Below, one piece after another: positions 10,198 through 26,533 of a stretch of 64,000 nucleotides of DNA (position 1 is its first letter; each line of letters begins with the position of its first letter). Location of the stretch: IMG/VR virus record IMGVR_UViG_3300025364_000003, positions 62,001-126,000 of that record; one strand, written 5' to 3'. The notes beneath the pieces were generated by a model that saw only the letters and a program-made list of their open reading frames with translations, ran no database searches and was not told where the DNA came from. The position numbers were made by a program, and so were the translations under genes.

Positions 10198-10200
10198 AAT

Positions 10201-11942: not shown

Positions 11943-12493
11943 TATTTGTTCTCCGGTCCTGTGCAATCGCTTGCATCATGGATAAGGTCAGTATAGCAGT
12001 ACCAGTCCCCCTGGTCAAGCTGATTATATTCGCCCTCGGAAACCGACCACGTAGCCGTTTGGCCTCGATAGGCAATGTCGACCGTCCAATACTCGGGATA
12101 GGTCGTACAGCTTGTGTGACCGTCCGAATCCGTAGTGCAACGAGTCTCCGGGGGGTGATACTCCTTGGAAGTGACCACACCCTCCTGAATATCAGTAAAA
12201 TACTGATATACGGACAATCCAATCATTCCAACAATGAACAAGAAAATCCCGCCAATGGCTAGGTTGTGAAAGCTCGGCATTGCCGGTATAGAAGGCATTG
12301 CTGGCATAGAGAAATGCCGGCGAGACAAAGAATGCTTAAGCGAAGCCTTTTTTTCCTTGGTGCGACGAAGTTCCTCTTCGGCCTTTCGGACCTTTTCGAA
12401 CATTTCCTCATCGTCAGCCTTGGCTCTCGCCAGCTCATCACGGAGCCTGGCGATTTCCTTTTCTTTGGCTGCCAGCGTAGGGTCTCTGTACAT
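11942..12493 (-). CDS. Membrane-anchored protein (coiled coil, one TM helix, exported beta domain)
   Basis: ATG 12493 coupled to the upstream stop; TM LAIGGIFLFIVGMIGLSVY; EGVVTSKEYHP..CT..CT..YW motif. Confidence 0.75.
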   Translation of the reverse strand: MYRDPTLAAKEKEIARLRDELARAKADDEEMFEKVRKAEEELRRTKEKKASLKHSLSRRHFSMPAMPSIPAMPSFHNLAIGGIFLFIVGMIGLSVYQYFTDIQEGVVTSKEYHPPETRCTTDSDGHTSCTTYPEYWTVDIAYRGQTATWSVSEGEYNQLDQGDWYCYTDLIHDASDCTGPENK

Positions 12494-12774
12494 TAGCGCA
12501 CCTTTGCTGAAAGGGGCCAGTACCAAGGGTACCGATGGAAATAGCCAGAGACGAAACCGCCCCTGCCCAGCTTTGGAAGCTTCATTCCATTTGGGTCGTC
12601 CGCCTCGTCTGGGGGATGCTGGCACTTGTGCCCGGCGATCATCAGTGCTTTTGGCTCCTCCAGGAGCAGAGACACGAAGTGTAGGTTGAGCCATCCAGAA
12701 CGGTCAACATGGAACGTAAGATAAAAGGGACCGACTTTTACATCGGTCTCGATATCATGTCGCTTGCGGTTCAT
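12493..12774 (-). CDS. Hypothetical protein
   Basis: 93-aa ORF inside the minus-strand operon. Confidence 0.65.
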   Translation of the reverse strand: MNRKRHDIETDVKVGPFYLTFHVDRSGWLNLHFVSLLLEEPKALMIAGHKCQHPPDEADDPNGMKLPKLGRGGFVSGYFHRYPWYWPLSAKVR

Positions 12775-12785
12775 TTTATACTAGT

Positions 12786-12977
12786 CTAATAAGAGGTATT
12801 GAGGATGCACTCGTGAAAATGATAGTTCGATTCGGAGATGTAAGCCCTGGGCAATCGGACCTTCTCCTGGGCCATGTGCTTGCACATGGCTTCTTCGGCC
12901 TTTTCTTCGGAGCTGAAGACGCCCAGGAAAGTCATATCCTTGTCGGGGTGCGACTCTACGTAGGTAACTGCCCACAC
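12786..12977 (-). CDS. Small protein with LGVFSSEEKA motif (common phage beta-beta-alpha family)
   Basis: WAVTY...FLGVFSSEEKAEEA; start uncertain. Confidence 0.6.
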   Translation of the reverse strand: MWAVTYVESHPDKDMTFLGVFSSEEKAEEAMCKHMAQEKVRLPRAYISESNYHFHECILNTSY

Positions 12978-13478
12978 TTCCTGATCATCGTCCTCGTCCT
13001 GGACGTATTTGGTGGAAAAATCCTCCTGAAGGATTTTGCTCTTGAACTCGATGATACATCATCGCCCAGGACCGCCGTTGCCCGCCTCATGATGTAAAAA
13101 TAGGATACCACATGGGCATCCTGTTTTGAACTCATTAACGGATTTTGCGGACAAGAACCTCGTGGAAATCAAAACACCTCGATCACGAGGACGTAGCGGT
13201 CGCTGTGCCTGGTATAGAGCTTGCTCTTGGCGTGAGCCTCAGAACGAGCCTTGGTACGCCACCAGTGCTTGACGCCATCGATGCTATAGTGTAGTTCGAA
13301 CATTTCACACTCCCGTAAGATGTGCGAGAATCGTTGCCGTGGTACAGGGGTCGAACGACCCCAACCGCCACATGAGTTTAAACATCCAGAGTCGCATCCT
13401 TTCTTTTCCTCTCATTAGTCCTTATAAGGTAGCACAGCTAGAGGAAGATGTAAACCTATTTTAGGATATTGGTGATTC

Positions 13479-13853
13479 TCAGAACGTGGAGGTATCGATA
13501 TAGCCACGACGGAAATAGTTGGCCAAAGCCTTGGTCTCATCCGAAGTGAGCTTGTCCAGAGCCTTCGCCACCAGGTTATCAGCGTCCTTACTGTAGGGGC
13601 TCCTGATGGAGTAGGTAGCACCGACCTCGGCTCTAAGAGCATCGGTCACAGCCTTGCCGCCTCGCTCCTCCAGTTGACAGAGGCTCGGGGCGACCCGCCA
13701 CTTGGCTCCAACCTTGGTTCGACCGCCCCTTCCTCGGCCCTCCAGAGTCTGGACCAGCAAGGTCTTTCTGTTGATCTTCACGATCTGACCAAGGGTCTGT
13801 TCGCCGTTCGGACGTCCGAACGTGACCACATCATCGATTCTGAATCCACTCAT
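13479..13853 (-). CDS. Hypothetical protein, SH3-like N-terminus with RG loop
   Basis: FRIDDVVTF...GQIVKINRKTLLVQT..GRGRGG...WRVAPSL. Confidence 0.75.
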   Translation of the reverse strand: MSGFRIDDVVTFGRPNGEQTLGQIVKINRKTLLVQTLEGRGRGGRTKVGAKWRVAPSLCQLEERGGKAVTDALRAEVGATYSIRSPYSKDADNLVAKALDKLTSDETKALANYFRRGYIDTSTF

Positions 13854-13864
13854 TTTATTACCTT

Positions 13865-14092
13865 TCAGTCTAGGGGACCTTCCCCGTCATTGGGGGCAAG
13901 CCCTCGAAATTCGTTGCAGAGGTGGAAGAAATCCGTGAGACTATGCCGCTTTGCAAACAAAACTCGGTCTCCCACAAGGCCAACCTCGAAGGTACCGCCG
14001 GTATTTCGAGCGATGCGCTGCTCGAAGGTAACCCTACCAAGCTTATTCTGCTCGGCGATTTCCTTCACATCCTCATGAGTTAGACTTGCCAT
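13865..14092 (-). CDS. Small hypothetical protein
   Basis: GAGG SD before ATG 14092. Confidence 0.6.
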   Translation of the reverse strand: MASLTHEDVKEIAEQNKLGRVTFEQRIARNTGGTFEVGLVGDRVLFAKRHSLTDFFHLCNEFRGLAPNDGEGPLD

Positions 14093-14099
14093 GTTTTCC

Positions 14100-14345
14100 T
14101 CAGGAGCAGTTAGGAACCTTCGGACCATCGGGTTTGGAAAATAGCGAGATGACTTCGAAATGGTCCGGATGTTGAGATCTTACTCCTGGACCTGGTGCGT
14201 CTCCTGGGTCTCCACAGCACGCTCTGCGATGCTCAGCCCCCACCAGATAGCATATCCGATACCACCCATGGTCGCCAGGCTCAACATGATACAAAAAGCG
14301 AACCAGAGCCCAAACCGAACCCAACTCGCTTAAACGTCCTGCCAA
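14100..14345 (-). CDS. Small hypothetical protein
   Basis: 81-aa ORF filling the gap in the operon. Confidence 0.5.
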   Translation of the reverse strand: MAGRLSELGSVWALVRFLYHVEPGDHGWYRICYLVGAEHRRACCGDPGDAPGPGVRSQHPDHFEVISLFSKPDGPKVPNCS

Positions 14346-14373
14346 AATGATCTTCCCTCATTTTATTCCTTCT

Positions 14374-14988
14374 TCAGTTGGAAGCCGCATGGCTTCCATC
14401 TTCGTTCAACCAAGGGCACTTCTCGTTGTAGAGAGCCGTAGCCTTGTCGCCCAGCTTCTCCATGAGAGAGCGAATCTCATTCATCCGTCGATTGCCAGCT
14501 GCGTAGACGCTGTAGTCATCGGAGTAGTGGTAATACCAATCGTGATTGGTGACCAGGCGCTCGAACTTTTCCCAATCCGTCTCGATCATGGTCTCCCAAA
14601 CCGTGAACACGTCATGGACAGCTGCCGGGTAGGTACAACCGTCGACCGACGGCAGCTTTCCCTGAAGCTCTCCAAGCTTACGGTTACGGGCATCACGGAG
14701 GAGCTTTTCCTCGCAGCGAATGTCCTCCGCACGGCCACGGTAGCGCTTCTGGAACCTCGGAAGCTTTTCCAGCTCTTGGATCCTTCGTCGGCACTCCTCG
14801 TCCACCGGAGCTGTCAACTTCTTCCAGGCATCGGACTTGCGCTGGTTAGCCTCGCCGCAGCGCTTGACGGCTTCCTCACGGAGAGCTGTGCGCTCCGTCT
14901 TGGACAGCTGCTTGTAATCCTCGAAGTAATAGCTCTGGCCATCGACTCGGACGAAATCGAAAAACTGACCGAAGGTGTGCCTGTACAT
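14374..14988 (-). CDS. Hypothetical protein with HDWYYHYSDD motif
   Basis: Own promoter (GG-TTCAAA-17-TATATT) and GAGGAG SD; C-terminal HDW.Y.YSDD motif recurrent in phage proteins. Confidence 0.8.
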   Translation of the reverse strand: MYRHTFGQFFDFVRVDGQSYYFEDYKQLSKTERTALREEAVKRCGEANQRKSDAWKKLTAPVDEECRRRIQELEKLPRFQKRYRGRAEDIRCEEKLLRDARNRKLGELQGKLPSVDGCTYPAAVHDVFTVWETMIETDWEKFERLVTNHDWYYHYSDDYSVYAAGNRRMNEIRSLMEKLGDKATALYNEKCPWLNEDGSHAASN

Positions 14989-15075
14989 TCGCTATCTCCT
15001 CTTTCCTTGATATGCTACGAATATAGCATATTGCCAGAGGGGTTTGAACCTATTAGCAAAAGGTTTGGGTTACAG

Positions 15076-15363
15076 TTATACTGGATTCTTTAGCACGAGC
15101 TGATCTTGTGTGGCTGGAACAAAATCACCCCAACGTGCTTCTGTGCCCAGGAAACGAAGCCCCTTGACCTGATCATCCTCGAAGAGGATTCGGAACTGAT
15201 ACCTCTGGACCTTGTCCAGATGCTCCCACTGGAGTCCAGATAGCTTGGCGGCCATATAAAAGGGTCCGCCCCCTCCAACATAATCTTCGGGCCATACGGA
15301 GGCATTCTCATCCTCCACCCACATTTCCTGTTCGGGGTCGTACTCAATCGTAACGAAATTCAT
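15076..15363 (-). CDS. Hypothetical protein
   Basis: 95-aa ORF with AGGA SD. Confidence 0.65.
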   Translation of the reverse strand: MNFVTIEYDPEQEMWVEDENASVWPEDYVGGGGPFYMAAKLSGLQWEHLDKVQRYQFRILFEDDQVKGLRFLGTEARWGDFVPATQDQLVLKNPV

Positions 15364-15395
15364 GTTCGTTTCCTGTGCGAAAGGTGGAACTGGAT

Positions 15396-15545
15396 TTACC
15401 TGTAAGGTCCAAACATTATGCTTTTTTTGGGTAACCAGAATTTATTGATATACCATCGGCTGATGGCATGACCTATCATGATTCCCAGGATAAACAACCT
15501 GACATGTAGCCAAGTTTTAAACAGAAATATTGCAATTGTAAGCAT
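15396..15545 (-). CDS. Small membrane protein
   Basis: Hydrophobic 49-aa ORF downstream of tRNA-Glu. Confidence 0.45.
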   Translation of the reverse strand: MLTIAIFLFKTWLHVRLFILGIMIGHAISRWYINKFWLPKKSIMFGPYR

Positions 15546-15666
15546 TTGATTTAGGCTCCTACCCGGCATTGCAGCACGAACCAAGTCGACATTGGTTCTC
15601 GGGATCTTCTGTGAGCAATTTCCCAATGGGAACACAGATGTTCTCTGCTTGAACTATAAGAGCTAG

Positions 15667-15739
15667 TGACCCCAACGGGATTCGAACCCGTATTAACAGC
15701 GTGAAAGGCTGCTGTCCTGAACCGTTAGACGATGGGGCC
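15667..15739 (-). tRNA. trnE: tRNA-Glu(UUC)
   Basis: GGCCCCA/TGGGGTC acceptor stem, GCAGC-CTTTCAC-GCTGT anticodon arm, GGTTCGAATCC T-arm; followed by CTA, not CCA. Confidence 0.95.
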
Positions 15740-15902
15740 AAGCGTGTAGAAGTTGCGACCCACAGAGTCTACACCCTCTGTGCATGTCCAGCAGTGTCGG
15801 TGGTGGCCATTTGTAGTGCGGGCCTGTTAGGAGGCAACCGCCGGGGGACATTATTAGTTTAGCAGGAATTAGCTTGAATATGAACCCCATTGGGGAATTT
15901 AG

Positions 15903-16301
15903 TTATTCTCGGTTGTCTTTACAGCGATGACAATCATCACAAAGGGGTTGAATGTTGTCAACAGTGTTGGAACCGCCATCACTCATCGAGTGGATGTGAT
16001 CAAGTTGTAAATTGAGATCAAATGTTCTGCAATAGCTGCATTTATGCTTGTAATCAAGCAAAATCTGGGCCCAGGCCCGAGATTGCAGTCTGCCAGGCAG
16101 TTTTCTCTTTTTTGCTCGTCTGTTGTGCCGATGAGTTCTTCGTTGGCTGTCAGCAAAACAATCGTAACAAATTTTGTATTGTCGTTTGTTTGCGACGCAT
16201 TGCTGATCAATGGTATGTCCTCTGTTTTGTTTTAGGCAACAAAGCGCACAGTGCACCTTTGTCGTGTTGAGCACAACAATGGGAGGAGCTGACAGTGACA
16301 T
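15903..16301 (-). CDS. HNH endonuclease with N-terminal Cys motif, inside the tRNA cluster
   Basis: CSYC...LDHIHSMSDGGSNTVDNIQPLCDDCH. Confidence 0.9.
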   Translation of the reverse strand: MSLSAPPIVVLNTTKVHCALCCLKQNRGHTIDQQCVANKRQYKICYDCFADSQRRTHRHNRRAKKRKLPGRLQSRAWAQILLDYKHKCSYCRTFDLNLQLDHIHSMSDGGSNTVDNIQPLCDDCHRCKDNRE

Positions 16302-16335
16302 AACTTTATCAATTTACTGTAAAATGCTTCGCTTA

Positions 16336-16419
16336 TAGGGCCGGTGGGACTCGAACCCACAAGGGCTTGCGCCCGAGAGATTTTAAGTCTCCTCTGTATG
16401 CCAATTCCAGCACGGCCCC
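16336..16419 (-). tRNA. trnL: tRNA-Leu(UAA)
   Basis: Anticodon loop CTTAAAA, long variable arm GGGCGCAAGCCC, GGTTCGAGTCC T-arm; no encoded CCA. Confidence 0.95.
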
Positions 16420-16502
16420 GTGAAATGTTTAACTATAGGTCACCCAAAGTCCCTGCATCCACTTTGAAAAAATGGTGACTAAAATCTTACTCATATCATT
16501 GA

Positions 16503-16575
16503 TGGGTCCAGAGGGAATCGAACCCCCAACCGTCGGGTTAAAAGCCCGCTGCTCTGCCGATTGAGCTATGGACCC
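16503..16575 (-). tRNA. trnK: tRNA-Lys(UUU)
   Basis: GGGTCCA/TGGACCC acceptor stem, loop CTTTTAA, GGTTCGATTCC T-arm; no encoded CCA. Confidence 0.95.
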
Positions 16576-16659
16576 AATACCAGGTTCTCCCACCATTGGG
16601 ACATTGCCTGGCTAGAACATCTCTATGTTAGCATGCCCGAGCCCAAGTTTGAACCGATT

Positions 16660-16944
16660 TTAGTTCTTGCTGTTGCTCTTAGGCATGAAAGCCCAGAGGA
16701 ACAGTGTGGTCACAAAGGCGTGCCAGTACGAGATCGCATGGGGCAGCATGGGCACCATAGCCGGAACGTACCAGGCCCAGAGCAGCTGAAACAGCCAGGC
16801 GAAGCCGAACAGTAGTCCGACATTCAGAGCGAAACCCAGGAACATGAACGTGGTCGCCTGCGACTTGGTTGCACCCTTGAGCCAGAGCTTCGTGAAGCCA
16901 AGGAGGGGCACGTGTACATTGTAATTGCTGTTGTATCCGAACAT
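16660..16944 (-). CDS. Small membrane protein (2 TM)
   Basis: Two hydrophobic segments; AAGGA SD. Confidence 0.75.
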   Translation of the reverse strand: MFGYNSNYNVHVPLLGFTKLWLKGATKSQATTFMFLGFALNVGLLFGFAWLFQLLWAWYVPAMVPMLPHAISYWHAFVTTLFLWAFMPKSNSKN

Positions 16945-17055
16945 TTTCCATTCCTTCTTTTAAAGGCCCAGAGCTGCACGCTCATCAAAGGTGTGAACCG
17001 ATTATAGAATATTGGTGGCTACAGTATAGATGTAATTTGATAGGGGCGGAAAGTT

Positions 17056-17433
17056 TCAGTAGGAACTTGCGAGTTCCTTGGCATTTGCCAGGATGGTGGG
17101 CCAGGGATGGTTCTCCAGTTCCTCTTGAGCTGCTAGGAGGAGGGCTTGGTTCTTTTCGGAGTTGTTCTTCTCCACGAGAAGGCGCAGGTCGTCGACCTTG
17201 CGGAGCAAACTCTCGTATTCCTGACGAGTCGGCTTGGTGTCGCCGTGTCCGGCCTGACAGAGGAAGCAGAAGTGCTTCTTCTTGTGCATGTAAATGCTTC
17301 GGGCAATTGGTGCTCCTCGATGGTAAGGACACATACCCTGCCCCAAAGCGTTCTTCATCAAGGAATCGCCACCATTATGCCTGTAAGGCGGCTGCTGGAC
17401 CACATATGTCATATCACCGTCGTCGTTGCTCAT
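17056..17433 (-). CDS. Putative Zn-finger / coiled-coil protein
   Basis: CPYH...CFLC motif then coiled coil; GAGG SD before ATG 17433. Confidence 0.7.
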   Translation of the reverse strand: MSNDDGDMTYVVQQPPYRHNGGDSLMKNALGQGMCPYHRGAPIARSIYMHKKKHFCFLCQAGHGDTKPTRQEYESLLRKVDDLRLLVEKNNSEKNQALLLAAQEELENHPWPTILANAKELASSY

Positions 17434-17496
17434 TTGTTTACCTCTTGTTATAAACACTGGTAGGCTACCATAGATGCAGCCACAATTTTACCTAAA

Positions 17497-17679
17497 TTAG
17501 ATTGGCTTCCAATCTTCATCCAGCTCGGTTACGTGCTCCACATGGGTCTCTTCCTGATACATCTCGTCGAGTTCCCCTCGGCGAATGACTTCTTCCACCT
17601 TTTTCTGAGCTTCTCGCCAATCTTTGGCTTCGACAAAAACCTGTGTAGAAACCGAAACCTTATACTTTCTCTTAATCAC
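17497..17679 (-). CDS. Small hypothetical protein (DpnD/PcfM-like pattern)
   Basis: KYKVSV.TQVFVEAKDWREA; GTG start overlapping the upstream stop. Confidence 0.55.
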   Translation of the reverse strand: MIKRKYKVSVSTQVFVEAKDWREAQKKVEEVIRRGELDEMYQEETHVEHVTELDEDWKPI

Positions 17680-17909
17680 TAAGTTCCTCCTCTGATGTTG
17701 CTGCAAAGCCAACACCTGGCATTCCAGTCGGTCTTTTCCGCACGAAGAGCCTTGAGCCATTTCTCTTCTTCTTTGCGGCAGTCCTTGAACAGGGTCACAA
17801 GCTCTTGATCTTTATTTTTGTATGCTTGGCCCACCAGTTTTTTATAAGAGGCCACACGGGCCTCTGAGGCCGCAATGTACCTAGAAAGTGTTTTGCCCCA
17901 ATCTTCCAT
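17679..17909 (-). CDS. Small coiled-coil protein
   Basis: 76-aa ORF in the operon. Confidence 0.65.
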   Translation of the reverse strand: MEDWGKTLSRYIAASEARVASYKKLVGQAYKNKDQELVTLFKDCRKEEEKWLKALRAEKTDWNARCWLCSNIRGGT

Positions 17910-18105
17910 ATTACTTTAGATAAAAGAGAAGGTTACCCTCTCTTTTGCGAAGAGGGGAAGTTTCTTCTTTGTTCTCGAAGTGGCAATCCACGCAAACATG
18001 TGCCTGTTCCGACACTCCTGCGAACCGTTGTATCACAGTGCACGCAACGAGTCATTGTCCACCAGAAAACGAGTTTTTTCCAAAGTTTCTGAAGCCAATA
18101 CATGC

Positions 18106-18804
18106 TCACTCTCCAATGGAGAAACGCAAGCGCAAGACCCTCTCTTCTCTCGGAGAAAGAGTGCGAAGCAACTGTTTTACGATATTGGCCTGAGACTCAG
18201 ACTCCAACTGCTCCTGGGCAGATGAAACCTCGGTATCTTCGATAAAATCGCCAAGAGAAGCATCCCCCTCTTCTCCAATGCTCATATCAAGCGACAGAGG
18301 ATTTTTGATATATTCAAAAATTCGTACGACCTTATCTTTCGGCAGCTCCAAGAAAGCGGAGAGTTCTTCTGGAGAAGGTTCGGAGCCGTTGACCTCCATC
18401 ATGAGCCGAATGGCCTTACGGAGTCGGCCAATGGTTTCCTGCATATGCACAGGAATACGAATGGTGCGAGCTTTATCTTGAAGGGCTCGACCAATCGCCT
18501 GACGAATCCAGTGGGTTGCGTAAGTAGAAAAACGGAATCCCTTGGTGTGATCGAACTTCTCTACTGCTCGCATGAGCCCGATGTTACCCTCCTGAATGAG
18601 GGCCATGAAGTCCATGCCTCGACCACGGTAGCGCTTTGCAATAGAAATAACCAGACGAAGATTCGACTCGACCATTTCGTTTCGAGCACGATCACCGTCT
18701 GGTCCACCTTTGAGTACCCGCTTGGCGAGCATAACCTCGCCCTCTCGGGTGAGAAGGTTGTCCTTCATTTTGTTGATATACACGCTTGTGGTAGTTTTGG
18801 TCAT
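18106..18804 (-). CDS. RpoD-derived sigma factor A, ending before region 4.2
   Basis: Regions 1.2 (LLTREGEV), 2 ([40 protein letters not shown]), 3 ([18 protein letters not shown]) and 4.1 ([13 protein letters not shown]), then IGE-stop. Confidence 0.92.
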
Positions 18805-18839
18805 TGTTCAACCCTACCACATTTTAGTGCATCTGTCAA
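18805..18839 (-). promoter_or_regulatory. Canonical sigma70 promoter for sigma A (TTGACA-17-TAGGGT, extended -10, leaderless)
   Basis: Exact TTGACA at 18839-18834, TG before the -10, ATG 6 nt after the -10. Confidence 0.8.
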
Positions 18840-18964
18840 TCGACTATAATTTATTGGCGGTTTAGTAAACCACCTTCGGCATCACAGTGTAACCATCTGG
18901 TGACAGTCGACGAACCCTTTCCTGTGAATTCTCATAACCTGGCATGGGCCTTGCTTCGATTGCA

Positions 18965-19150
18965 TCAGCCCCACCCCAGTTCACGGTCACGACGAATCAT
19001 CCGAGCGATATATTCCTCTTCCTTGGCAGTTCCTTGAAGCAAGCTCGGAAAGACAGGCTTGAGTCGCTGACTCAAGCACCGCTCGGTCGTAGTCTTCTCC
19101 AGAGTAGTCTGCCCGACTCGAAATTCGACCCGCTCGTTACCGTCAGCCAT
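18965..19150 (-). CDS. Small hypothetical protein
   Basis: 61-aa ORF overlapping the HNH stop, GGAGG SD. Confidence 0.6.
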   Translation of the reverse strand: MADGNERVEFRVGQTTLEKTTTERCLSQRLKPVFPSLLQGTAKEEEYIARMIRRDRELGWG

Positions 19151-19559
19151 TGTTGCCTCCCATTTCCTTCAATACTAGCATGAAGTCGTCCGGGAGTGAA
19201 CCGATTAGGATCATTTTCGAGACTTCTCGCTGTAGCTGAATCAGCCTCTCAGCCTCAGGAAGATTTTCGCCCTTCTTGCACAGCTCGATTGCTTGTCCAA
19301 TCGAAATCCTGGTCTCATGGAGGATCTTCCTCCGCAAAACCATATCGAGTTGAGCAGGCGTCGGGTTACTGTCGCCCTTCGTCTTGTTGCAAGGCAAACA
19401 AGAGATAACAAGGTTCCACGCCCGGTGAGGACCACCCTTGGACTTGGGGATCACGTGGTCCACCGTCTTGGAGTCCCAAGTCAGAGACTCCCCACAGTAG
19501 AAACAACGTCCCTTGTCTCGCTTCCAGAGCGTGCGCTTGACCTTTAGTGAGGCCGACAC
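19143..19559 (-). CDS. HNH endonuclease
   Basis: CFYCG...TVDHVIPKSKGG...NLVISCLPCNKTKG. Confidence 0.92.
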   Translation of the reverse strand: MSASLKVKRTLWKRDKGRCFYCGESLTWDSKTVDHVIPKSKGGPHRAWNLVISCLPCNKTKGDSNPTPAQLDMVLRRKILHETRISIGQAIELCKKGENLPEAERLIQLQREVSKMILIGSLPDDFMLVLKEMGGNNG

Positions 19560-19573
19560 TTTCTTTCCTCGGT

Positions 19574-19915
19574 TTAGCTGTTTGGATCGAAACCAGCGTG
19601 ATAGATGTGATAGATCACATCCTCCCGCTGAGGAACGCTCAGTACAGAGTCATTATCCCAATGGATATGCCCCTGACAATCCTGTGAATTGCTCTTCACT
19701 GCCTCGTACCACTCGTCATCGTCCATCTGGACCAGGGTCCCAGGAAGAGCCTCGATATTATCATAAAACGGCACGACAGAATCGAGACTCGACCACCAGG
19801 CTACTAGCTCAGACTCCGACATCCCGGTGTCCCACCGCCAGTAACGGTAACCGTATTCCTCCTCTAGCCAGACGATAACGGTGTTGTTCATGTTTTCCTC
19901 AGCAGTCACGGGCAA
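19574..19915 (-). CDS. Hypothetical protein (acidic, aromatic-rich)
   Basis: 113-aa ORF in the operon. Confidence 0.7.
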   Translation of the reverse strand: MPVTAEENMNNTVIVWLEEEYGYRYWRWDTGMSESELVAWWSSLDSVVPFYDNIEALPGTLVQMDDDEWYEAVKSNSQDCQGHIHWDNDSVLSVPQREDVIYHIYHAGFDPNS

Positions 19916-20174
19916 TTTTCATATCGATCTCGCCGATGAGATCGTGCATCTCTTCCAGCTCTTCCAGGGTACAGAACAGGTTAAACCCCGAGCGGTAACG
20001 GAGCTCCTGAAAACGGAGCGAGTGCTCCGTTTGGATACGAACCATTCGGAGCGGCTGTCCCTTATTGATCCCGGAGGTCATCGTGCCAACATGGCACACC
20101 GTCGAGGTGTTGCCGTAGTCGTACGACTCCGGAGCATCGGTAAAGCGGATGAAAACCTTGTCTTCGTTGTTCAT
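19899..20174 (-). CDS. Hypothetical protein (leaderless)
   Basis: GG-TTCATT-17-TATATT-6-ATG promoter. Confidence 0.75.
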   Translation of the reverse strand: MNNEDKVFIRFTDAPESYDYGNTSTVCHVGTMTSGINKGQPLRMVRIQTEHSLRFQELRYRSGFNLFCTLEELEEMHDLIGEIDMKIARDC

Positions 20175-20188
20175 GTTCTGAATATACC

Positions 20189-20362
20189 TTATTCGGAGTT
20201 AGAAATGAACCGAATATGAATTTTGTCGTAGGCTTTCTTGGCCTGCTTCAGGGTGGTGACAATTCCCTCCCTGGCTTGAGTGGCAACAATCACCCTGCTG
20301 AAGAGTTCCCGACGTTTGATCGGATCCTTGAGGATCTCACGGATATTGACTCGCTGCCTCAT
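20189..20362 (-). CDS. Small hypothetical protein
   Basis: ATGA overlap with the upstream stop at 20359-20361. Confidence 0.6.
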   Translation of the reverse strand: MRQRVNIREILKDPIKRRELFSRVIVATQAREGIVTTLKQAKKAYDKIHIRFISNSE

Positions 20363-20604
20363 CGGCCACCCTGACGAGCGGTCCATTCTGCCTCGAACGC
20401 TTCCTCGGCCCGTTCGCCCACGTCCACAGCTACATCCCAAACCCAATGACCTGGATCGTCGAGCCAGTGATCGCAATCGAAGTGCCAAGCGGCATTCTCT
20501 GCAAGGCGGGTACAGTTGACCTCACCACCCTGCCAAAGGTCCGGGTGACTATGGTCGGAAAGTTGTTCCCGCATGAATTGGCGGACTTGTGTCTTGACGA
20601 ACAT
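20359..20604 (-). CDS. Small acidic protein
   Basis: GEVNCTRLAENAAWHFD..WLDDPGHWVWDVA; AAGGAG SD. Confidence 0.7.
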   Translation of the reverse strand: MFVKTQVRQFMREQLSDHSHPDLWQGGEVNCTRLAENAAWHFDCDHWLDDPGHWVWDVAVDVGERAEEAFEAEWTARQGGR

Positions 20605-20616
20605 TATTGCTCTTTC

Positions 20617-20808
20617 TCAGTAAATCTTGACCCAGCCAGCCTTTAGAGCCGGCTGTAGCTGAACGCCGTTAACCGGATGACGGTGGCCCTCGTTGAGGAG
20701 CACGAAATAATTTCCCTCGTGGTCCTTGACCAGGGACTGATTAACGTCACTGCTAACGTGCTTACCGTTTCGGTAGTAATGAACCTCGACGTAACGTACG
20801 TGCTCCAT
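20617..20808 (-). CDS. Small hypothetical protein (leaderless)
   Basis: GG-TTCACA-17-TAATAT-7-ATG places the start at 20808. Confidence 0.65.
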   Translation of the reverse strand: MEHVRYVEVHYYRNGKHVSSDVNQSLVKDHEGNYFVLLNEGHRHPVNGVQLQPALKAGWVKIY

Positions 20809-20966
20809 GGTTCCCATATTAGTAAATAAGTCATCAGGTGTGAACCGAATATGGATTTTATCCATGAATCAGACCCATATAGAAAAATACTGTTGTCCCC
20901 ATTTGGTGACCGGCCTTTTTATTTAATTCGGTGCAAACTGAGGAAAGCCCGTGATAACTTAGAATC

Positions 20967-21482
20967 ACGGACGCACTTGTAGAAAAGGCTCGTCGATTCG
21001 CCCTGGAACATCATGGGGACCAGAGATATGGTGAACATCCGTACAGTCCCCATCTGGGGGAGGTGGCTGATTTGGCTCGGCCCTGGGGTCCGGTAGCGGA
21101 AGCGGTTGCCTGGCTTCACGATGTGGTCGAGGATACGGACGTGTCGAGCTACGACGTGTTCATGTCTTTCGGGGATCCTGTGGCGTCCTGTGTCTGGATC
21201 GTTACGGATCCAGGCGGTAGGAACCGCAAGGAAAAGAAGCTCCGACTTCACGAGAGACTCAAAGAAATCGTAGCCAACGATGCTAAGGGTTATGTTCAGT
21301 ACCGTCCAGCCCTCCTTGTCAAGGTCTGTGACCGCCTGGCTAACCTACGAGCAGGCAAGGCCGGCAATCCAGGGCTCCTGAAGATGTACCGTAAGGAGCA
21401 TACTGCGTTCAAGGATGCAGCATATGTGCCAGGTCTCTGCGATCGGCTTTGGAACGAAATCGAAGAAATCCTAGCCGATTAA
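20967..21482 (+). CDS. HD-domain small alarmone hydrolase-like protein (SpoT/Mesh1 type) with ACG at the start position
   Basis: KARRFALEHH..QRYG..PY..HL..V, LHDVVEDT, LLVKVCDRLAN; frame open from 20958 with ACG exactly 6 nt after the promoter -10. Confidence 0.85.
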   Translation, partial: TDALVEKARRFALEHHGDQRYGEHPYSPHLGEVADLARPWGPVAEAVAWLHDVVEDTDVSSYDVFMSFGDPVASCVWIVTDPGGRNRKEKKLRLHERLKEIVANDAKGYVQYRPALLVKVCDRLANLRAGKAGNPGLLKMYRKEHTAFKDAAYVPGLCDRLWNEIEEILAD

Positions 21483-21528
21483 CAGAAATAGGTTCAAACC
21501 TAGTCTAGGGCATGGTATATTCATAAGC

Positions 21529-22119
21529 ATGAAGGTACACGTCAACAGCTTCGTCAAGCGTCAGACCCCGGAGTCGGAGTTTTCTCATTTCGAGGGACCT
21601 CCAGGTTGTGAGGACGTCTGGGAAAACCTCCGTGTTTCGATCGAGCTAATGATCGAGCAGGATCATGGCATCGAACCCGGTTACCGGGATGGCGTGATTC
21701 TCGTTCACGTGAACCCCCAGCATTTCTTTTCTGGCGTGGTTCAGCTCAAGGAGGGTGACCACCTTGTGGGAGAGTTCAAGGCCCGTCGACCCGGCGAGTC
21801 TCCTCGGAAGTCGATCGGCGTGGTTGGTGCAGAAAAGATGCCCGCCAAGACCGCTTTCGTGGTTCTCTACGCTTCCACCGTGCTTGCGGAGGGTGGAGAT
21901 AACGAGCTTCCGGCCGAGGAAGGGAATTGGGAGATCATTTCCTTGAATGCCAGTCCGGTCGAGGGTGAAATGCCCATCAGTCCGATGGTGCTTCTTCACA
22001 ACCACTTCGGTAGCGACGGTGGCACCAGTACCAACCTAAGCGATTCTGAGCTGGTCGCCATGCTCCGTGAGTCTTTCGAGTTCTGGAAGGACAAGGCAAT
22101 GGTAGCCCCGAAGGGTTGA
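21529..22119 (+). CDS. DUF3228-like protein (leaderless)
   Basis: F..RQ, GYRDG, VVLY, WEIISLNA, E.P..P...HN.FG..GG, FEFW..KA pattern. Confidence 0.65.
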   Translation: MKVHVNSFVKRQTPESEFSHFEGPPGCEDVWENLRVSIELMIEQDHGIEPGYRDGVILVHVNPQHFFSGVVQLKEGDHLVGEFKARRPGESPRKSIGVVGAEKMPAKTAFVVLYASTVLAEGGDNELPAEEGNWEIISLNASPVEGEMPISPMVLLHNHFGSDGGTSTNLSDSELVAMLRESFEFWKDKAMVAPKG

Positions 22120-22337
22120 ACATGTCCCAAAAAAGCCCCGAATATCGAAATGGATACGGAGACGCAAAAGCTGATCTCCTACGGCTAGTCAAGGAGGCTC
22201 TCAAGAGCCTCCATGAGGCTTGCCAAAATAATGGCTTCTGCGACCCCTCCGAAAAAGATAAGGAGCTTCTGAGGCTCCGTGAGGCCGAGCTACGCCGCAT
22301 TAGGGGCATGATCAAGGCATTAAAGCCAAAAGAGTGA
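22116..22337 (+). CDS. Small helical protein
   Basis: TTGA overlap; EYRNGY motif. Confidence 0.65.
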   Translation: MNMSQKSPEYRNGYGDAKADLLRLVKEALKSLHEACQNNGFCDPSEKDKELLRLREAELRRIRGMIKALKPKE

Positions 22338-22379
22338 ATTCTCTTTACCTGGGAAACCGGAAAAGGTAAGTTGTAGCAC

Positions 22380-23153
22380 ATGAGTATCCCGAATCGTCCG
22401 TTTGGTGTCGAACTTGAGTTCAACAGTGCACCTCCACCGGAAGTGCTGGCGTGGCTTCTCAGAGATAAGGGCATCAAGGCTCATGATGACGCCGTTGCCC
22501 GTGATCATTCGTTTTGGCTCGTGCATGATGATGCCTCTATCACTGGACCTGGGGTGCATATTGAGGTTTCTTCCCCGATCCTCCGAGGAAAGAAAGGTTT
22601 GGCCGAGGTTCGTTCAGTCTGTCGTTTTCTCACCAAGTTGGGCTGTAAGACGAATTCGTCTTGTGGGCTTCATGTCCACGTGAGTGATAGCAGAATCACC
22701 AATTCGACTCTGATAAACATTCTCAAGCGCTATGCAGAAAATGAAGAATTGATCGACTCTTGGATGACAAAGAGTCGTCGTGGAAACCGAAACCCATTTT
22801 GTCGTTCTCACAAGAGGGACTGGAAAGATATGGTTGCATGTCTTTCCGACAAGGAAGAGAATCTTAGATTGCGTTTTGGTGAACGTTTTGAGGTTTCTTC
22901 TACTGTTGGTGGTGATAAGATCAACTTCGATTCCAATTACGCCACCCTGGAATTCCGTCACCATCATGGGACACTCAACTCCACAGAAGTCTCCAATTGG
23001 GTACAATTCTGCCTAAACTTCGTGGAGGTTTCTGCCGATCTCACCCCTGGAACCCGACGAGCAACCAAGCGCACCAGGGACACTGGACCTCTGATGGGTT
23101 TGTCCACAAATATTCGGAATCATTTCACTTACCAGGCCGAGCGTCTTCGCTAA
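22380..23153 (+). CDS. Putative amidoligase (Amidoligase_2 family)
   Basis: FGVELE, D.SI, EVSSPIL, NSSCGLHVHV, TLEFRHHHGTLN motifs. Confidence 0.88.
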   Translation: MSIPNRPFGVELEFNSAPPPEVLAWLLRDKGIKAHDDAVARDHSFWLVHDDASITGPGVHIEVSSPILRGKKGLAEVRSVCRFLTKLGCKTNSSCGLHVHVSDSRITNSTLINILKRYAENEELIDSWMTKSRRGNRNPFCRSHKRDWKDMVACLSDKEENLRLRFGERFEVSSTVGGDKINFDSNYATLEFRHHHGTLNSTEVSNWVQFCLNFVEVSADLTPGTRRATKRTRDTGPLMGLSTNIRNHFTYQAERLR

Positions 23154-23206
23154 CGAATAACAGTTATTTGGTGTAAATCTTAGAACGTCTATAATAGGAT
23201 AATAAC

Positions 23207-23452
23207 ATGCTCATCAAGCTCAAAGACCGCAACGGAACCATCCCGGACTTCGATCGCCAGCTCGGGGAGGCTCGATACTGTCTGCCGGACATGGAAATGT
23301 ATCACCGAGCCTGTCTCGTCCTGTACGACACCGAGGCCAACAAGTTCACCCTGTTCACCCGTGATCTGGTCACTTCGGAGTACATGGTGACTCAGGTGGA
23401 GGGAACCCGTCGGGGCTTGCAGTACAAAAAGTTCTGGGAAAAAGCTTCGTAA
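23207..23452 (+). CDS. Small hypothetical protein (leaderless)
   Basis: GG-TGTAAA-17-TAGGAT-6-ATG. Confidence 0.7.
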   Translation: MLIKLKDRNGTIPDFDRQLGEARYCLPDMEMYHRACLVLYDTEANKFTLFTRDLVTSEYMVTQVEGTRRGLQYKKFWEKAS

Positions 23453-23491
23453 TAGGTTCACAACCAGGCTTTGGCCTGATATATTAAGACC

Positions 23492-23656
23492 ATGGCCAAG
23501 CGAAACAAGAAGAACGTCTCGGACGTGAAGCGACGCAGTGCCGCTGCCGTGGCCGCTATCCTCAAGACTGGTGCTGGTAAGCACGGGGACCGTCGCTTGA
23601 AGCGGATGAAGACCCGTGCGGCCCAGAAGCGGGCTGCCTTCCGAGACTGGAGGTGA
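23492..23656 (+). CDS. Very basic 54-aa protein (MAKRNKK...GAGKHGDRRLKR...)
   Basis: Below the ORF-track cutoff; leaderless GG-TTCACA-17-TATATT-6-ATG promoter; stop overlaps the next start. Confidence 0.75.
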   Translation: MAKRNKKNVSDVKRRSAAAVAAILKTGAGKHGDRRLKRMKTRAAQKRAAFRDWR

Positions 23657-23853
23657 GCATTACTGAACGGGAAGAAGAAGCCTTCAAGAAGGGCTACGAG
23701 CGCTGTCGGCTGGATATGGCCCGAGAGCTGGGTCAACTCATTGCGTATTACTACAACAAAGGTCAGACCAATGGTGGTGATGCGCTCCGTCATGCTAGCA
23801 CCGTGCTGCGAGCTGTGAAGCCTGGACAGAAGCCTTGGAATCCAGATATTTGA
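23653..23853 (+). CDS. Small helical protein
   Basis: GTGA overlap; FKKGYE motif. Confidence 0.65.
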   Translation: MSITEREEEAFKKGYERCRLDMARELGQLIAYYYNKGQTNGGDALRHASTVLRAVKPGQKPWNPDI

Positions 23854-23879
23854 ACCGATTAATAATCGGTTCAAATATC
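23845..23879. repeat. Perfect 16-bp inverted repeat containing back-to-back GGTTCAAA elements
   Basis: GATATTTGAACCGATT-AAT-AATCGGTTCAAATATC. Confidence 0.9.
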
Positions 23880-23907
23880 GAGAAATTCGGGATAAGCTAA
23901 ATTTAAG

Positions 23908-24243
23908 ATGACCAAGCCCACCTTGATATTCTACACCACGTTCAAGAACGTTCCTTATTCCGATGAGGAGTGGGAGCGTGCCAATAAGTGGCGTGCCAAA
24001 TTGGCCCAGGACAATCCGACCTGGGCTGAGAAGCACCCCGAAGACGTAGAGCCGCTGAAAACCCGTCCCGTTCATTCGTTCAGATATGGTCACGCATGTT
24101 TCTCTCACGAGGAAGCCCGTAAGGTCTGTGAGCAAGCCTTGGAAAGTGGTGTCCAGATGGTGACCTACTCAGCTTGGGACAGTAATAAGCAGGTAGGGGA
24201 GTGGTCTAGGCGTCAGGGTGGACATTGGTACCAGAGTAAATAA
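23908..24243 (+). CDS. Hypothetical protein
   Basis: 111-aa ORF downstream of the promoter at 23870. Confidence 0.75.
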   Translation: MTKPTLIFYTTFKNVPYSDEEWERANKWRAKLAQDNPTWAEKHPEDVEPLKTRPVHSFRYGHACFSHEEARKVCEQALESGVQMVTYSAWDSNKQVGEWSRRQGGHWYQSK

Positions 24244-24508
24244 TACTAGTATTTGGGTTCACATTCATCTTTACAAGCGCACCACCAAGCGCATTCAGAA
24301 CTTGAATTCTGAGCTTCGCAGGCTTCGTGCCAAGGCTAAGGCTATGAAGCCGGGTCTTGACGACATCCATGCCTTGGAGGAGATGTATCCCGAAGAAAAG
24401 GCTATCATTTGGGGGCGTACCGAATACATCTGAGGTATCAAATATGCAGTTAGCCGAATTTTCTTGAAATAGGTTCAGAATCCAACAAATATAGGACATA
24501 TTAAGAAC

Positions 24509-24772
24509 ATGAGTAACCGACGTAAGCGTAAGCAGGCCCGTAAGCAGGCTCGCCGTGAGGAGCGTAAGACTCGTTTGGTCGAGCTGGAGTCCCGTCGCCT
24601 CCAGGAGGAGGATGCTGGGCTGGAGATGAGCACTGAGCGTGTCTCCCCGGTTCTGGTGGACGAGTGGGATGACTTCGACCCGGAGTACGAGGAGCGCATC
24701 CGCAAGGACCGTGCCATCAAGGATCGTCGTGCCCGTAAGCAGGAGCTTCTCAACGAGGCTCTGAGCCGCTGA
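24509..24772 (+). CDS. Highly charged small protein (paralog 1)
   Basis: Leaderless promoter; C-terminus EWDD..EERIRKDR..RKQELLNEAL. Confidence 0.75.
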   Translation: MSNRRKRKQARKQARREERKTRLVELESRRLQEEDAGLEMSTERVSPVLVDEWDDFDPEYEERIRKDRAIKDRRARKQELLNEALSR

Positions 24773-24822
24773 AAAAACCTAAAAAGGTTTAAAACCCCAC
24801 CCTAATAAGGTATATTCTAATC

Positions 24823-25140
24823 ATGGCAGACAACAGGACCCGTAAGCTCGACCGCAAGGCCATCAAGCGTCTCCAGAAGGCCATTCAGCGTCTCGATCGT
24901 CAGATCGAGCGGGAGATCGAAACGCACCCTGACGGAGCCGAGTCCCCGTTCCTCTTCGACTTGAACGACGTGAGGTGGGTTCTGGAGCTACAGCTACAGC
25001 GACTCGACCAGCAGATGGACCCTCCGGGCGAGTGGGACGATCGGGACGAGTCCCGTGAGGACCGAATCCGGGAGGACCGCAGCCGTAAGGCTTGTCGTGC
25101 GGACAAGCAGTTTTTGTTCGATGAGGCCCTGGGTCTTTAA
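24823..25140 (+). CDS. Highly charged small protein (paralog 2)
   Basis: Leaderless promoter; C-terminus EWDD..EDRIREDR..DKQFLFDEAL. Confidence 0.75.
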   Translation: MADNRTRKLDRKAIKRLQKAIQRLDRQIEREIETHPDGAESPFLFDLNDVRWVLELQLQRLDQQMDPPGEWDDRDESREDRIREDRSRKACRADKQFLFDEALGL

Positions 25141-25157
25141 AAGAAAAGAAGGTAAAA

Positions 25158-25442: not shown

Positions 25443-25535
25443 CACAAGGGCTGAATCCGTTCGGCTCCAAATCCCCAAAAAGGTTCAAACCTGGCCTGAA
25501 TATGATATATTCAAGGCTAAGGAAGGGAGACCTAC

Positions 25536-26423: not shown

Positions 26424-26533
26424 TTTATGGGTGTGTCGAGACGCATCTCGGAAATTGTCCTCCGTAAACAAAAAAGGGTTCAAAGATTAGCCAGACTATG
26501 GCATTCTAAGAACCATAGAGAGGGAGACAACGA

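What the first reader, a model, noticed from the sequence alone, without database searches (positions are those of the whole stretch)
18802..18839. Sigma A alone has a textbook TTGACA promoter, suggesting the trigger of a cascade
Seen: upstream of sigma A is TTGACA-17 nt-(TG)N-TAGGGT-6 nt-ATG, the only exact TTGACA-type promoter I found in the left arm. Sigma B instead has the phage-type GG-TTCATA-17-TAATAT promoter. Inference: host sigma70 makes sigma A first, which then turns on the GG-TTYANA regulon including sigma B.
Basis: partly seen in the sequence, partly recalled or inferred. Interest (0 to 1): 0.65.

Follow-up and report, generated by a model that had tools for sequence, protein, structure and literature searches.

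The report
Distinct promoter on a truncated phage sigma gene
The promoter in front of a giant phage's first sigma-factor gene is real and differs, in every related phage checked, from the roughly 29 other promoters around it; but both phage sigma factors lack the part that reads the -35 box, so the proposed cascade needs an extra factor.

Summary
On the minus strand, TTGACA (18839-18834), a 17-nt spacer ending in TGG, TAGGGT (18816-18811) and 6 nt precede the sigma A ATG (18804).

The hexamer pair alone is at chance level (1 found, 0.57 expected). The promoter is still credible for three reasons:
- It sits 6 nt from a start codon whose N-terminus is conserved, which implies a leaderless mRNA.
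- It scores 3.6 bits against the local promoter class, whose members score at least 18.
- Sigma A orthologues in five lineages all carry TTGAnn, TGn, TAnnnT and 6 nt before ATG, while about 65 neighbouring promoters carry GG-TT(C/T)AnA.

The window lies in a 461 kb megaphage from hypersaline mats. Its 50-57% GC island holds 29 GG-TTCAnA-N17-TATATT promoters, and 17 of them have leaderless geometry.

The cascade idea is only partly supported. Sigma A and sigma B belong to an RpoD-derived family that always stops at the region 4.1/4.2 boundary, so neither can read the invariant GGTTCAnA box unaided. Orthologous sigma A promoters keep the phage-specific GG. A sigma B orthologue has a TTGATT-TATAAT promoter. 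No RNA data exist.

A third motif without a -35 box, CTA(C/T/A)TTA, precedes genes in the low-GC part and is a candidate target for these sigmas.

The parts
18834..18839 (-). -35 hexamer TTGACA of the sigma A promoter
   Evidence: Read directly. It is the only TTGACA-N17-TANNNT in the window. G at the third base is conserved in sigma A orthologue promoters of five lineages.
18817..18833 (-). 17-nt spacer whose last three bases (18819-18817) are TGG, a TGn extended -10
   Evidence: TGn is present in 6 of 6 sigma A-type orthologue promoters.
18811..18816 (-). -10 hexamer TAGGGT (TANNNT; 3/6 match to TATAAT)
   Evidence: Orthologues have TATGGT, TATGCT, TAGGAT, TATACT and TAATAT. With the preceding GG it reads GGTAGGGT and could double as a weak Shine-Dalgarno sequence for read-through transcripts (inference).
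18802..18810 (-). 6-nt discriminator (tgaaca) plus the ATG. The predicted transcription start is at or next to the A of the ATG, giving a leaderless mRNA.
   Evidence: This geometry is shared with 17 of 29 class-II promoters. An in-frame TGA sits 6 nt upstream. The N-terminus MTKTT... is conserved from this ATG in all orthologues.
18106..18804 (-). Sigma A gene: 232 aa, RpoD-derived, with regions 1.2, 2, 3 and the 4.1 helix only; no region 1.1 and no region 4.2
   Evidence: Pfam r1_2, r2 and r3. Only positions 1-18 of Sigma70_r4 match. Alignment A1. The truncated sigmas separate from full-length ones on a 100/99 branch.
18856..18876 (-). Hairpin upstream of the sigma A promoter (8-bp stem, no U-tract)
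   Evidence: Fold. It is not a canonical intrinsic terminator, so read-through from upstream is possible.
19172..19200 (-). Class-II promoter GG TTCACT-17-TAGTAT upstream of a 61-aa ORF (18965-19150). It is a possible read-through source for sigma A.
   Evidence: PWM score 21.7. The same promoter is conserved in L111 and L115.
19143..19559 (-). HNH endonuclease gene, syntenic upstream of sigma A in relatives
   Evidence: Pfam HNH E=6e-12. Present upstream of the sigma gene in L009, L111, L113 and L115.
6664..34297 (.). Span holding 29 class-II promoters, consensus tttnnTAATnGG TT(C/T)AnA N17 TAT(A/T)(T/C)T N6-7 ATG, on both strands. The span is divergently organised around about 20.9 kb.
   Evidence: GGTTCANA-N17-TANNNT: 16 found against 0.19 expected. 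PWM list: 0/29 have G at the third -35 base, 17/29 have leaderless geometry and 15/29 have TGn. These promoters also drive tRNA-Glu and tRNA-Lys.
34267..34297 (+). Sigma B promoter GG TTCATA-17-TAATAT, 6 nt before the ATG (class II)
34304..35023 (+). Sigma B gene: 239 aa, 55% identical to sigma A, truncated at the same point
   Evidence: It sits on a long branch nested inside the sigma A clade, consistent with a duplication. A terminator lies at 35043-35064.
8215..8748 (+). Tandem-HTH protein P0122 (177 aa, acidic tail). Second recognition helix is SRDRIRKF. Class-II promoter at about 8103-8133 plus a CA-rich leader of about 75 nt.
   Evidence: Pfam HTH_7. Sequence. 36 homologues, some on the same contigs as truncated sigmas. 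pLDDT 82.
27402..27878 (+). Tandem-HTH paralogue P0121 (53% identical to P0122). Recognition helix is SRDRVTKL. Class-II promoter at 27290-27318 plus a leader of about 75 nt.
   Evidence: Weak Sigma70_r4 match, E=0.047.
8844..8872 (+). Second TTGA-type match in the island: TTGATA-17-TATTAT, 44 nt upstream of the 336-aa gene at 8916
   Evidence: Not followed up.

Best explanation
Window 18802-18839 (-) is a genuine promoter for a leaderless mRNA of sigma A. It forms its own regulatory class in a 461 kb megaphage.

Its features are TTGAnn at -35, TGn, a G-rich TAnnnT, and an ATG 6 nt downstream. These keep sigma A outside the roughly 29-member GG-TTCAnA regulon that fills the surrounding GC-rich island.

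The most likely reader is the host primary-sigma holoenzyme, which can use -35, TGn and -10 together. That would make sigma A an early product.

Sigma A is an RpoD-derived sigma that retains core-binding, -10 and TGn-reading regions but lacks region 4.2. It would redirect host core polymerase to phage promoters that do not need a sigma-borne -35 reader. Candidates are its own TGn promoter, the half of class II with TGn, and/or the CTA(C/T/A)TTA sites of the low-GC part, which have no -35 box. If sigma A does drive the GG-TTCAnA class, a separate protein must read that box.

Shown: the sequence, its geometry, its class distinction, its conservation, and the truncation of the sigmas. Inferred: which polymerase form reads which class, and the timing.
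For: - Sequence and geometry.
- Not a class-II member: 3.6 bits against at least 18.
- Orthologue promoters: L009 GG TTGATT-17-(tgc)TATGGT-6-ATG; L010-12 GG TTGAAT-16-(tgg)TATGCT-6-ATG; L111 GG TTGAAA-17-(tgt)TAGGAT-6-ATG; L115 GG TTGAAA-16-(tgg)TATACT-6-ATG. All co-resident promoters are TTCA or TTTA, with Fisher p about 1e-7.
- The N-terminus is conserved from the first ATG.
- Truncation at the 4.1/4.2 boundary in all family members, which separate from full-length sigmas on a 100/99 branch.
- The alignment shows the PVHxxE motif (the TG-reading part of region 3.0, from established sigma70 knowledge) and the YATxWIRQ motif of region 2.4 retained in sigma A and sigma B.
- E. coli promoters need two of the three elements -35, TGn and -10 (PMC2988021).
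- No phage RNA polymerase in the 206 kb held.
- The CTA[ACT]TTA motif is 34/53 intergenic where 19% of the record is intergenic, oriented 9-45 nt upstream of starts, with no -35 box.
Against: - The host is unknown, so its -35 consensus is assumed.
- Relatives keep the phage-specific GG in front of TTGA, and similar GG-TTGAAn leaderless promoters are scattered through the low-GC part. The TTGA class may therefore also be read by a phage factor.
- The hexamer pair alone is at chance frequency.
- No terminator isolates sigma A from the class-II promoter at 19200.
- There are no transcript data.
- 255 kb of the genome could not be searched.
Confidence: 0.5

Rival explanations
1. All GG-TT(G/C)AnA promoters, including the sigma A promoter, are early promoters read by the host primary sigma. 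G versus C at -33 only tunes strength. The phage sigmas without region 4.2 serve the CTA(C/T/A)TTA promoters of the structural, low-GC part, which have no -35 box, much as T4 gp55 serves late promoters.
For: - Both classes share one architecture: GG, 17-nt spacer, TAnnnT, 6 nt, ATG.
- A sigma lacking region 4.2 fits promoters without a -35 box.
- A dense array of about one promoter per kb in an accessory or takeover-like island resembles phage early regions. T4 early promoters show extra conserved positions (PMC2988021).
- The tandem-HTH genes and tRNAs are all class II.
Against:
- G is strictly kept on sigma A genes.
- CTAnTTA ends in A rather than the T-7 that an RpoD-like region 2 is expected to require (established knowledge).
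Confidence: 0.28
2. Two phage-encoded -35 readers exist. The tandem-HTH paralogues act with the truncated sigmas as a sigma split in trans. The P0122 type (Arg in the recognition helix, SRDRVRRF) reads GG-TTGAnn. The P0121 type (Thr or Ser there, SRDRVT/SKL) reads GG-TTCAnA. The G/C switch would then define two phage-specific regulons.
For: - There are two sigma paralogues and two HTH paralogues.
- The HTH family occurs on the same contigs as truncated sigmas, at 48.6 kb and 67.5 kb.
- The two subtypes differ at the position that aligns with sigma70 R588. That residue is linked to the -33 base in classical suppressor genetics (my knowledge, not checked here).
- Several members carry precomputed Sigma70_r4 hits.
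Against: - Similarity to region 4.2 is weak: hhalign probability 6.8%; PDB profile search gives KorA 0.02 and SigA 0.18.
- The best structural matches are the GcrA DNA-binding domain and resolvase/Hin HTHs at Z 5.4-6.3, not sigma domain 4. Foldseek sigma hits have TM 0.16.
- Both HTH genes sit behind class-II promoters, which creates a bootstrapping problem.
Confidence: 0.12
3. The TTGACA/TAGGGT pair is a chance match. Sigma A is made from read-through transcripts that start at the class-II promoter at 19200 (-), and GGTAGGG, 7 nt before the ATG, serves as a Shine-Dalgarno sequence.
For: - The hexamer pair is expected 0.57 times per window.
- No canonical terminator lies between 19172 and 18839.
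- The -10 region is G-rich, and L111 has TAGGAT.
Against: TTGA, the 16-17 nt spacing, TGn, TAnnnT and the 6 nt to ATG are conserved in five lineages whose spacers are otherwise unalignable. L115 has TATACT, which has no Shine-Dalgarno potential.
Confidence: 0.07

Closest known systems
Bacillus phage SPO1 sigma cascade (host sigma A, then gp28, then gp33/34)
   Same: A lytic phage uses host core polymerase. The first phage sigma gene sits behind a host-like promoter, and a second sigma gene sits behind a different, phage-specific promoter class. A third motif marks the remaining genes. SPO1's switch from host sigma A to phage sigmas is described in PMC13401047 (listed).
   Different: Here the sigmas are close RpoD derivatives, about 55% identical to bacterial primary sigmas, and are truncated before region 4.2. 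The phage-specific class keeps a -35-like box that these sigmas cannot read. Most transcripts are predicted to be leaderless. The wiring of sigma B is not conserved in L114. Nothing has been tested experimentally.
T4 late transcription (gp55 plus gp33) and T4 middle transcription (AsiA/MotA sigma appropriation)
   Same: A sigma without a -35-reading domain works with a separate factor, or a separate DNA-binding protein reads a box near -30/-35 while -10 recognition stays sigma70-like (PMC2988021). Jumbo phages without their own polymerase encode minimal or RpoD-like sigmas plus gp33 (PMC7824862).
   Different: Sigma A and sigma B retain regions 1.2, 2, 3 and helix 4.1, unlike gp55. No gp33, AsiA or MotA homologue was identified, although I did not search for them systematically. 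The box sits exactly at -35 with a 17-nt spacer.
Extended -10 (TGn/-10) promoters
   Same: TGn directly upstream of TAnnnT is found at the sigma A promoter and its orthologues (6/6) and in 15 of 29 class-II promoters. A sigma lacking region 4.2 is expected to depend on such promoters (E. coli sigma70 truncation work, from my knowledge; promoter classes in PMC2988021).
   Different: The sigma A promoter also has a perfect -35, so it is a -35/TGn/-10 promoter rather than an extended -10 promoter without a -35 box.
Leaderless mRNAs (lambda cI from PRM; the middle and late genes of Thermus phage phiYS40, from my knowledge; actinobacterial and Deinococcus genes)
   Same: A TANNNT -10 lies 6-7 nt upstream of the start codon with no Shine-Dalgarno sequence (general background in PMC3160421, listed).
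   Different: Here leaderless geometry is concentrated in one GC-rich island of a megaphage whose other genes often have Shine-Dalgarno sequences.

Membership tests
Sigma70-type -35/TGn/-10 promoter (host primary-sigma class) | -35 hexamer close to TTGACA | tested here: met
   6/6 match.
Sigma70-type -35/TGn/-10 promoter (host primary-sigma class) | Spacer of 17 +/- 1 nt | tested here: met
   17 nt in the window; 16-17 nt in orthologues.
Sigma70-type -35/TGn/-10 promoter (host primary-sigma class) | -10 hexamer close to TATAAT | tested here: inconclusive
   TAGGGT matches 3/6. It keeps T-12, A-11 and T-7 but fails the scanner's 4/6 rule. TGn is present.
Sigma70-type -35/TGn/-10 promoter (host primary-sigma class) | Transcription by host holoenzyme, with a mapped start 6-8 nt after the -10 | not testable with these tools
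   No RNA run holds the phage, and the host is unknown.
Phage class-II promoter (GG-TTCAnA-N17-TATATT) | GG at -38/-37 and C or T at the third -35 base | tested here: not met
   The sigma A promoter has 'ga' before TTGACA and G at the third base, whereas 0/29 class members have G.
Phage class-II promoter (GG-TTCAnA-N17-TATATT) | Overall PWM score of at least 18 bits | tested here: not met
   3.6 bits.
Phage class-II promoter (GG-TTCAnA-N17-TATATT) | 17-nt spacer and -10 placed 6-7 nt from the ATG | tested here: met
Group 1/2 sigma70 (RpoD-like) protein | Regions 1.2, 2 and 3 | tested here: met
   Pfam r1_2, r2 and r3. About 55% identity to bacterial RpoD/SigA.
Group 1/2 sigma70 (RpoD-like) protein | Region 4.2 helix-turn-helix that reads the -35 element | tested here: not met
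   The ORF stops after helix 4.1. Only positions 1-18 of PF04545 match, and no region 4.2 is found elsewhere in the 206 kb. The remaining 255 kb of the genome were not searchable.
Leaderless mRNA | -10 element 5-8 nt upstream of the start codon, no room for a Shine-Dalgarno sequence, and a protein conserved from that codon | tested here: met
SPO1-type sigma cascade | The second sigma gene lies behind the promoter class that differs from that of the first | tested here: inconclusive
   True in this phage. The sigma B orthologue in L114 has TTGATT-17-TATAAT.
Sigma region 4 supplied in trans (tandem-HTH proteins P0121/P0122) | Detectable homology or fold match to sigma domain 4 | tested here: inconclusive
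   hhalign probability 6.8%. PDB profile search gives SigA E=0.18. Best folds are the GcrA DNA-binding domain and resolvase HTHs at Z 5.4-6.3.

The most novel reading that the evidence does not exclude
A family of megaphages carries a primary-sigma derivative that has lost its -35-reading domain. Separate tandem-HTH proteins supply -35 recognition. A single-base switch at -33 (G versus C), matched by an Arg versus Thr/Ser change in the HTH recognition helix, separates two temporal regulons of mostly leaderless genes. A third class without a -35 box (CTAnTTA) is served by the fast-evolving sigma B. This would be a natural modular, split sigma system.
Probability: 0.13. Interest if true: 0.85.

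Novelty: new variant of a known kind. Interest (0 to 1): 0.6.

Why it matters
Phage sigma cascades are textbook, but this one differs in three ways:
- Its sigmas are RpoD-like and naturally truncated before region 4.2. About 20 metagenomic members all end at the same residue.
- The phage-specific promoter class still carries an invariant -35-like box.
- Most of the regulon is predicted to be leaderless.

If confirmed, it would show how a megaphage takes over host core polymerase with a sigma whose promoter-reading parts are divided between proteins. It would also provide a compact set of orthogonal promoter and sigma parts.

The conserved G/C difference at one promoter position gives a direct test by base swap.

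Tried and rejected
- Complex prediction of sigma A with P0122(1-130) returned no verdict. This is not evidence either way.
- Foldseek against the PDB with the P0122 model found nothing at E <= 0.001.
- I looked for a region 4.2 in small ORFs downstream of sigma genes in the window and in relatives. Pfam found nothing, even at E <= 5.
- I tried to search the full 461 kb record through locus L023. The record is not held, so absence of region 4.2, gp33/AsiA-like factors or a phage polymerase is shown only for 206 kb. The PF00940 control rang nowhere, so that search is uninformative.
- No RNA runs were found, so I did not use read laying.
- I considered chimeric assembly as the cause of the GC island and rejected it. 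The same protein lies on seven contigs of 0.2-1 Mb, including two 461 kb contigs from different samples.
- I considered that sigma A is interrupted by an intron, an intein or a frameshift and rejected it. All homologues stop at the same residue in different contexts, and three-frame translation downstream shows no region 4.2.
- Host identification was not achieved. The best-scoring full-length relatives are alphaproteobacterial-type RpoD, which is only a hint.
- Literature searches found no description of RpoD-like phage sigmas lacking region 4.2. The library is incomplete.

Full report
**Context.** The window is bases 62001-126000 of a 206.5 kb IMG/VR virus record that CheckV rates 45% complete. 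The same sigma protein lies on 461 kb contigs from two JGI samples. Runs that hold the DNA are hypersaline-lake and microbial-mat metagenomes, and none is RNA. The record is about 39% GC except for an island of 50-57% GC at window positions of about 1-35400. No phage RNA polymerase was found in the 206 kb. A portal gene and a terminase-like gene mark it as a tailed phage.

**Observation.** On the minus strand the sequence reads TTGACA (18839-18834), a 17-nt spacer ending in TGG, TAGGGT (18816-18811), tgaaca, then ATG (18804). An in-frame TGA lies 6 nt upstream of the ATG. The ORF (18106-18804) encodes a 232-aa protein with sigma70 regions 1.2, 2 and 3. Sigma B (34304-35023, 55% identical) is preceded by GG TTCATA-17-TAATAT-6-ATG.

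- The -35 is perfect, but the -10 matches TATAAT at only 3/6, so the consensus scanner did not list the site.
- TTGACA-N17-TANNNT occurs once in the window against 0.57 expected, so the hexamers alone prove nothing.

**The surrounding promoter class.**
- GGTTCANA-N17-TANNNT occurs 16 times against 0.19 expected.
- A weight matrix finds 29 sites between 6.6 and 34.3 kb and almost none elsewhere in the 206 kb.
- The consensus is tttnnTAATnGG TT(C/T)AnA N17 TAT(A/T)(T/C)T.
- In 17 of 29 sites, an ATG that opens an ORF of at least 30 codons follows 5-8 nt after the -10 (typically agaaccATG). This predicts leaderless mRNAs.
- 15 of 29 have TGn, and none has G at the third -35 base.
- These promoters also precede the tRNA-Glu and tRNA-Lys genes.
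- The island is divergently organised around about 20.9 kb.
- The sigma A promoter scores 3.6 bits on this matrix against at least 18 for members. It shares only the spacer length and the 6-nt distance to the ATG.

**Conservation.** Homologues of sigma A were located on metagenomic contigs. The promoters in front of sigma A orthologues are:

| Lineage | Promoter |
|---|---|
| L009 | GG TTGATT-17-(tgc)TATGGT-6-ATG |
| L010-12 | GG TTGAAT-16-(tgg)TATGCT-6-ATG |
| L111 | GG TTGAAA-17-(tgt)TAGGAT-6-ATG |
| L115 | GG TTGAAA-16-(tgg)TATACT-6-ATG |
| L013/L117 | GG TTGAAA-17-(tgc)TAATAT-7-ATG |

The other promoters on the same loci are TTCA or TTTA types. L117 is the exception, with three further TTGAAA promoters. 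Counting the five closest lineages, G occurs at 5/5 sigma A promoters and at 0-1 of about 65 others (p about 1e-7; the lineages are not independent). The spacers are otherwise unalignable, so the TTGA, the TGn, the TAnnnT and the distance to the ATG are held by selection. This is the main reason to accept the site as a real and distinct promoter.

Two points weaken the 'host textbook' reading:
- The orthologues keep the phage-specific GG and the AT-rich upstream context.
- GG-TTGAAn promoters with the same leaderless geometry are scattered through the low-GC part of the record.

**The sigmas.**
- Both proteins end at ...LR(L/M)RF..GE. Only the first 18 positions of Pfam Sigma70_r4 match, and no region 4.2 exists elsewhere in the 206 kb.
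- About 20 metagenomic homologues of 227-237 aa stop at the same residue, whereas the nearest full-length proteins are bacterial RpoD/SigA at about 55% identity.
- The truncated proteins sit on one side of a 100/99 branch.
- Sigma B and its orthologues form a long branch nested inside the sigma A clade, which suggests a duplication followed by fast divergence.
- The alignment shows that the region 2.4 motif (YATHWIRQ; tryptophan replaced by histidine) and the region 3.0 PVHxxE motif are retained. By established sigma70 knowledge these read the -10 and TGn elements.
- A sigma of this kind should bind core polymerase and read -10 and TGn, but it cannot read a -35 hexamer.
- The class-II box GGTTCAnA is invariant and sits at canonical spacing, so some other module must read it. 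This is the main problem with 'sigma A turns on the GG-TTYANA regulon' as stated.

**Candidate partners.**
- Two paralogous tandem-HTH proteins are encoded in the island and are 53% identical to each other: P0122 at 8215-8748 and P0121 at 27402-27878.
- Their family has 36 members, some on the same contigs as truncated sigmas.
- The family splits into two subtypes whose second recognition helix reads SRDRVRRF or SRDRVT/SKL.
- The helix aligns with TRERIRQ of region 4.2, but the similarity is weak.
- The structural model has pLDDT 82. It matches generic three-helix HTH domains best: GcrA DNA-binding domain at Z 6.3, and resolvase and Hin at Z 5.4-5.8.
- The HTH genes examined (both in this window, plus one each in L116 and L117) sit behind class-II promoters and carry CA-rich leaders of 75-95 nt. 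They therefore cannot be the first step unless the host reads class II at some basal level.
- I treat the idea of a sigma split in trans as a minority hypothesis.

**A third motif.**
- In the low-GC part, CTA(C/T/A)TTA is 34/53 intergenic where 19% of the record is intergenic.
- It points at a start codon 9-45 nt downstream, usually across a Shine-Dalgarno sequence.
- It has no conserved -35.
- It looks like a late or middle promoter without a -35 box, and is a natural candidate target for a sigma that lacks region 4.2.

Together the three motifs suggest three tiers: the TTGA type (including sigma A), the TTCA type (including sigma B here), and CTAnTTA. This resembles the SPO1 scheme, but the assignment of polymerase forms to tiers is inference. 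In L114 the sigma B orthologue has TTGATT-17-TATAAT, so the wiring varies between phages.

**Other considerations.** No canonical terminator separates sigma A from the class-II promoter at 19200. GGTAGGGT could act as a weak Shine-Dalgarno sequence on read-through RNA. This may explain why the -10 is G-rich.

**Verdict.**
- The site is a real, conserved, class-distinct promoter for a leaderless sigma gene.
- The cascade is plausible in its first step and incomplete in its second.
- The more notable result is the RpoD-derived sigma family without region 4.2, together with a largely leaderless regulon that carries a -35-like box these sigmas cannot read.

Noticed in passing
window 1-35400 (genome about 62-97.4 kb): An island of 50-57% GC sits inside a phage of about 39% GC. 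It holds both sigma genes, four tRNAs, nearly all GG-TTCAnA promoters, an RNA ligase, an amidoligase, DUF3228, an HD-domain protein, a KaiC-like ATPase and a DUF2201 metallopeptidase/VWA protein. Gene order is partly syntenic in L117.
   Followed up: partly
window 35373-35460 and 36129-36179: The right border of the island carries G8C8-type palindromes and homopolymer runs (GGGGGGGGCCCCCCCC, with inverted arms at 35400-35414 and 35446-35460). About 700 nt further on there are three perfect tandem copies of GTTGTGGGCTAGAGATA. This could be an origin, a packaging site or a recombination boundary.
   Followed up: partly
low-GC parts of the record, e.g. window 46603, 54227, 62557; genome 3807, 9166, 21892: The motif CTA(C/T/A)TTA is 34/53 intergenic, lies 9-45 nt upstream of starts and has no -35 box. 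It is probably a late or middle promoter class.
   Followed up: partly
window 8215-8748 (+) and 27402-27878 (+): Two paralogous tandem-HTH proteins have acidic tails. Each sits behind a class-II promoter and a CA-rich leader of 75-95 nt with a 5' hairpin, unlike the leaderless neighbours. The leaders are conserved in L116 and L117.
   Followed up: partly
window 50972-54199 (+): A 1075-aa ORF matches HNH endonuclease families at residues 98-291 and the portal protein phrog_213 at residues 591-854. It may be a portal gene carrying an HNH insertion or fusion.
   Followed up: no
window 19143-19559 (-): The HNH endonuclease gene upstream of sigma A is syntenic in most relatives (L009, L111, L113, L115), so it is probably not a sporadic homing element.
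   Followed up: partly
genome 85, 2173, 31072, 41128, 43380, 51999(-), 107488 (window 45488), 132533(-) (window 70533): GG-TTGA(A/G)n-N16-17-TAnnnT sites (one has TATAAA as the -10), several with an ATG or GTG 6 nt downstream, are scattered outside the island. They have the same architecture as sigma A orthologue promoters.
   Followed up: no
window 29804-29841 (+) and many class-II sites: The box plus the following bases often reads GGTTCAAA(t)CC, which resembles a tRNA T-arm (B-box-like). The meaning is unknown and it may be coincidence.
   Followed up: no
L104:5451-9713 (genome 24451-28716, +): A 1421-aa protein combines metallophosphoesterase, terminase-large-subunit-like and SbcC-like PHROG matches.
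   Followed up: no
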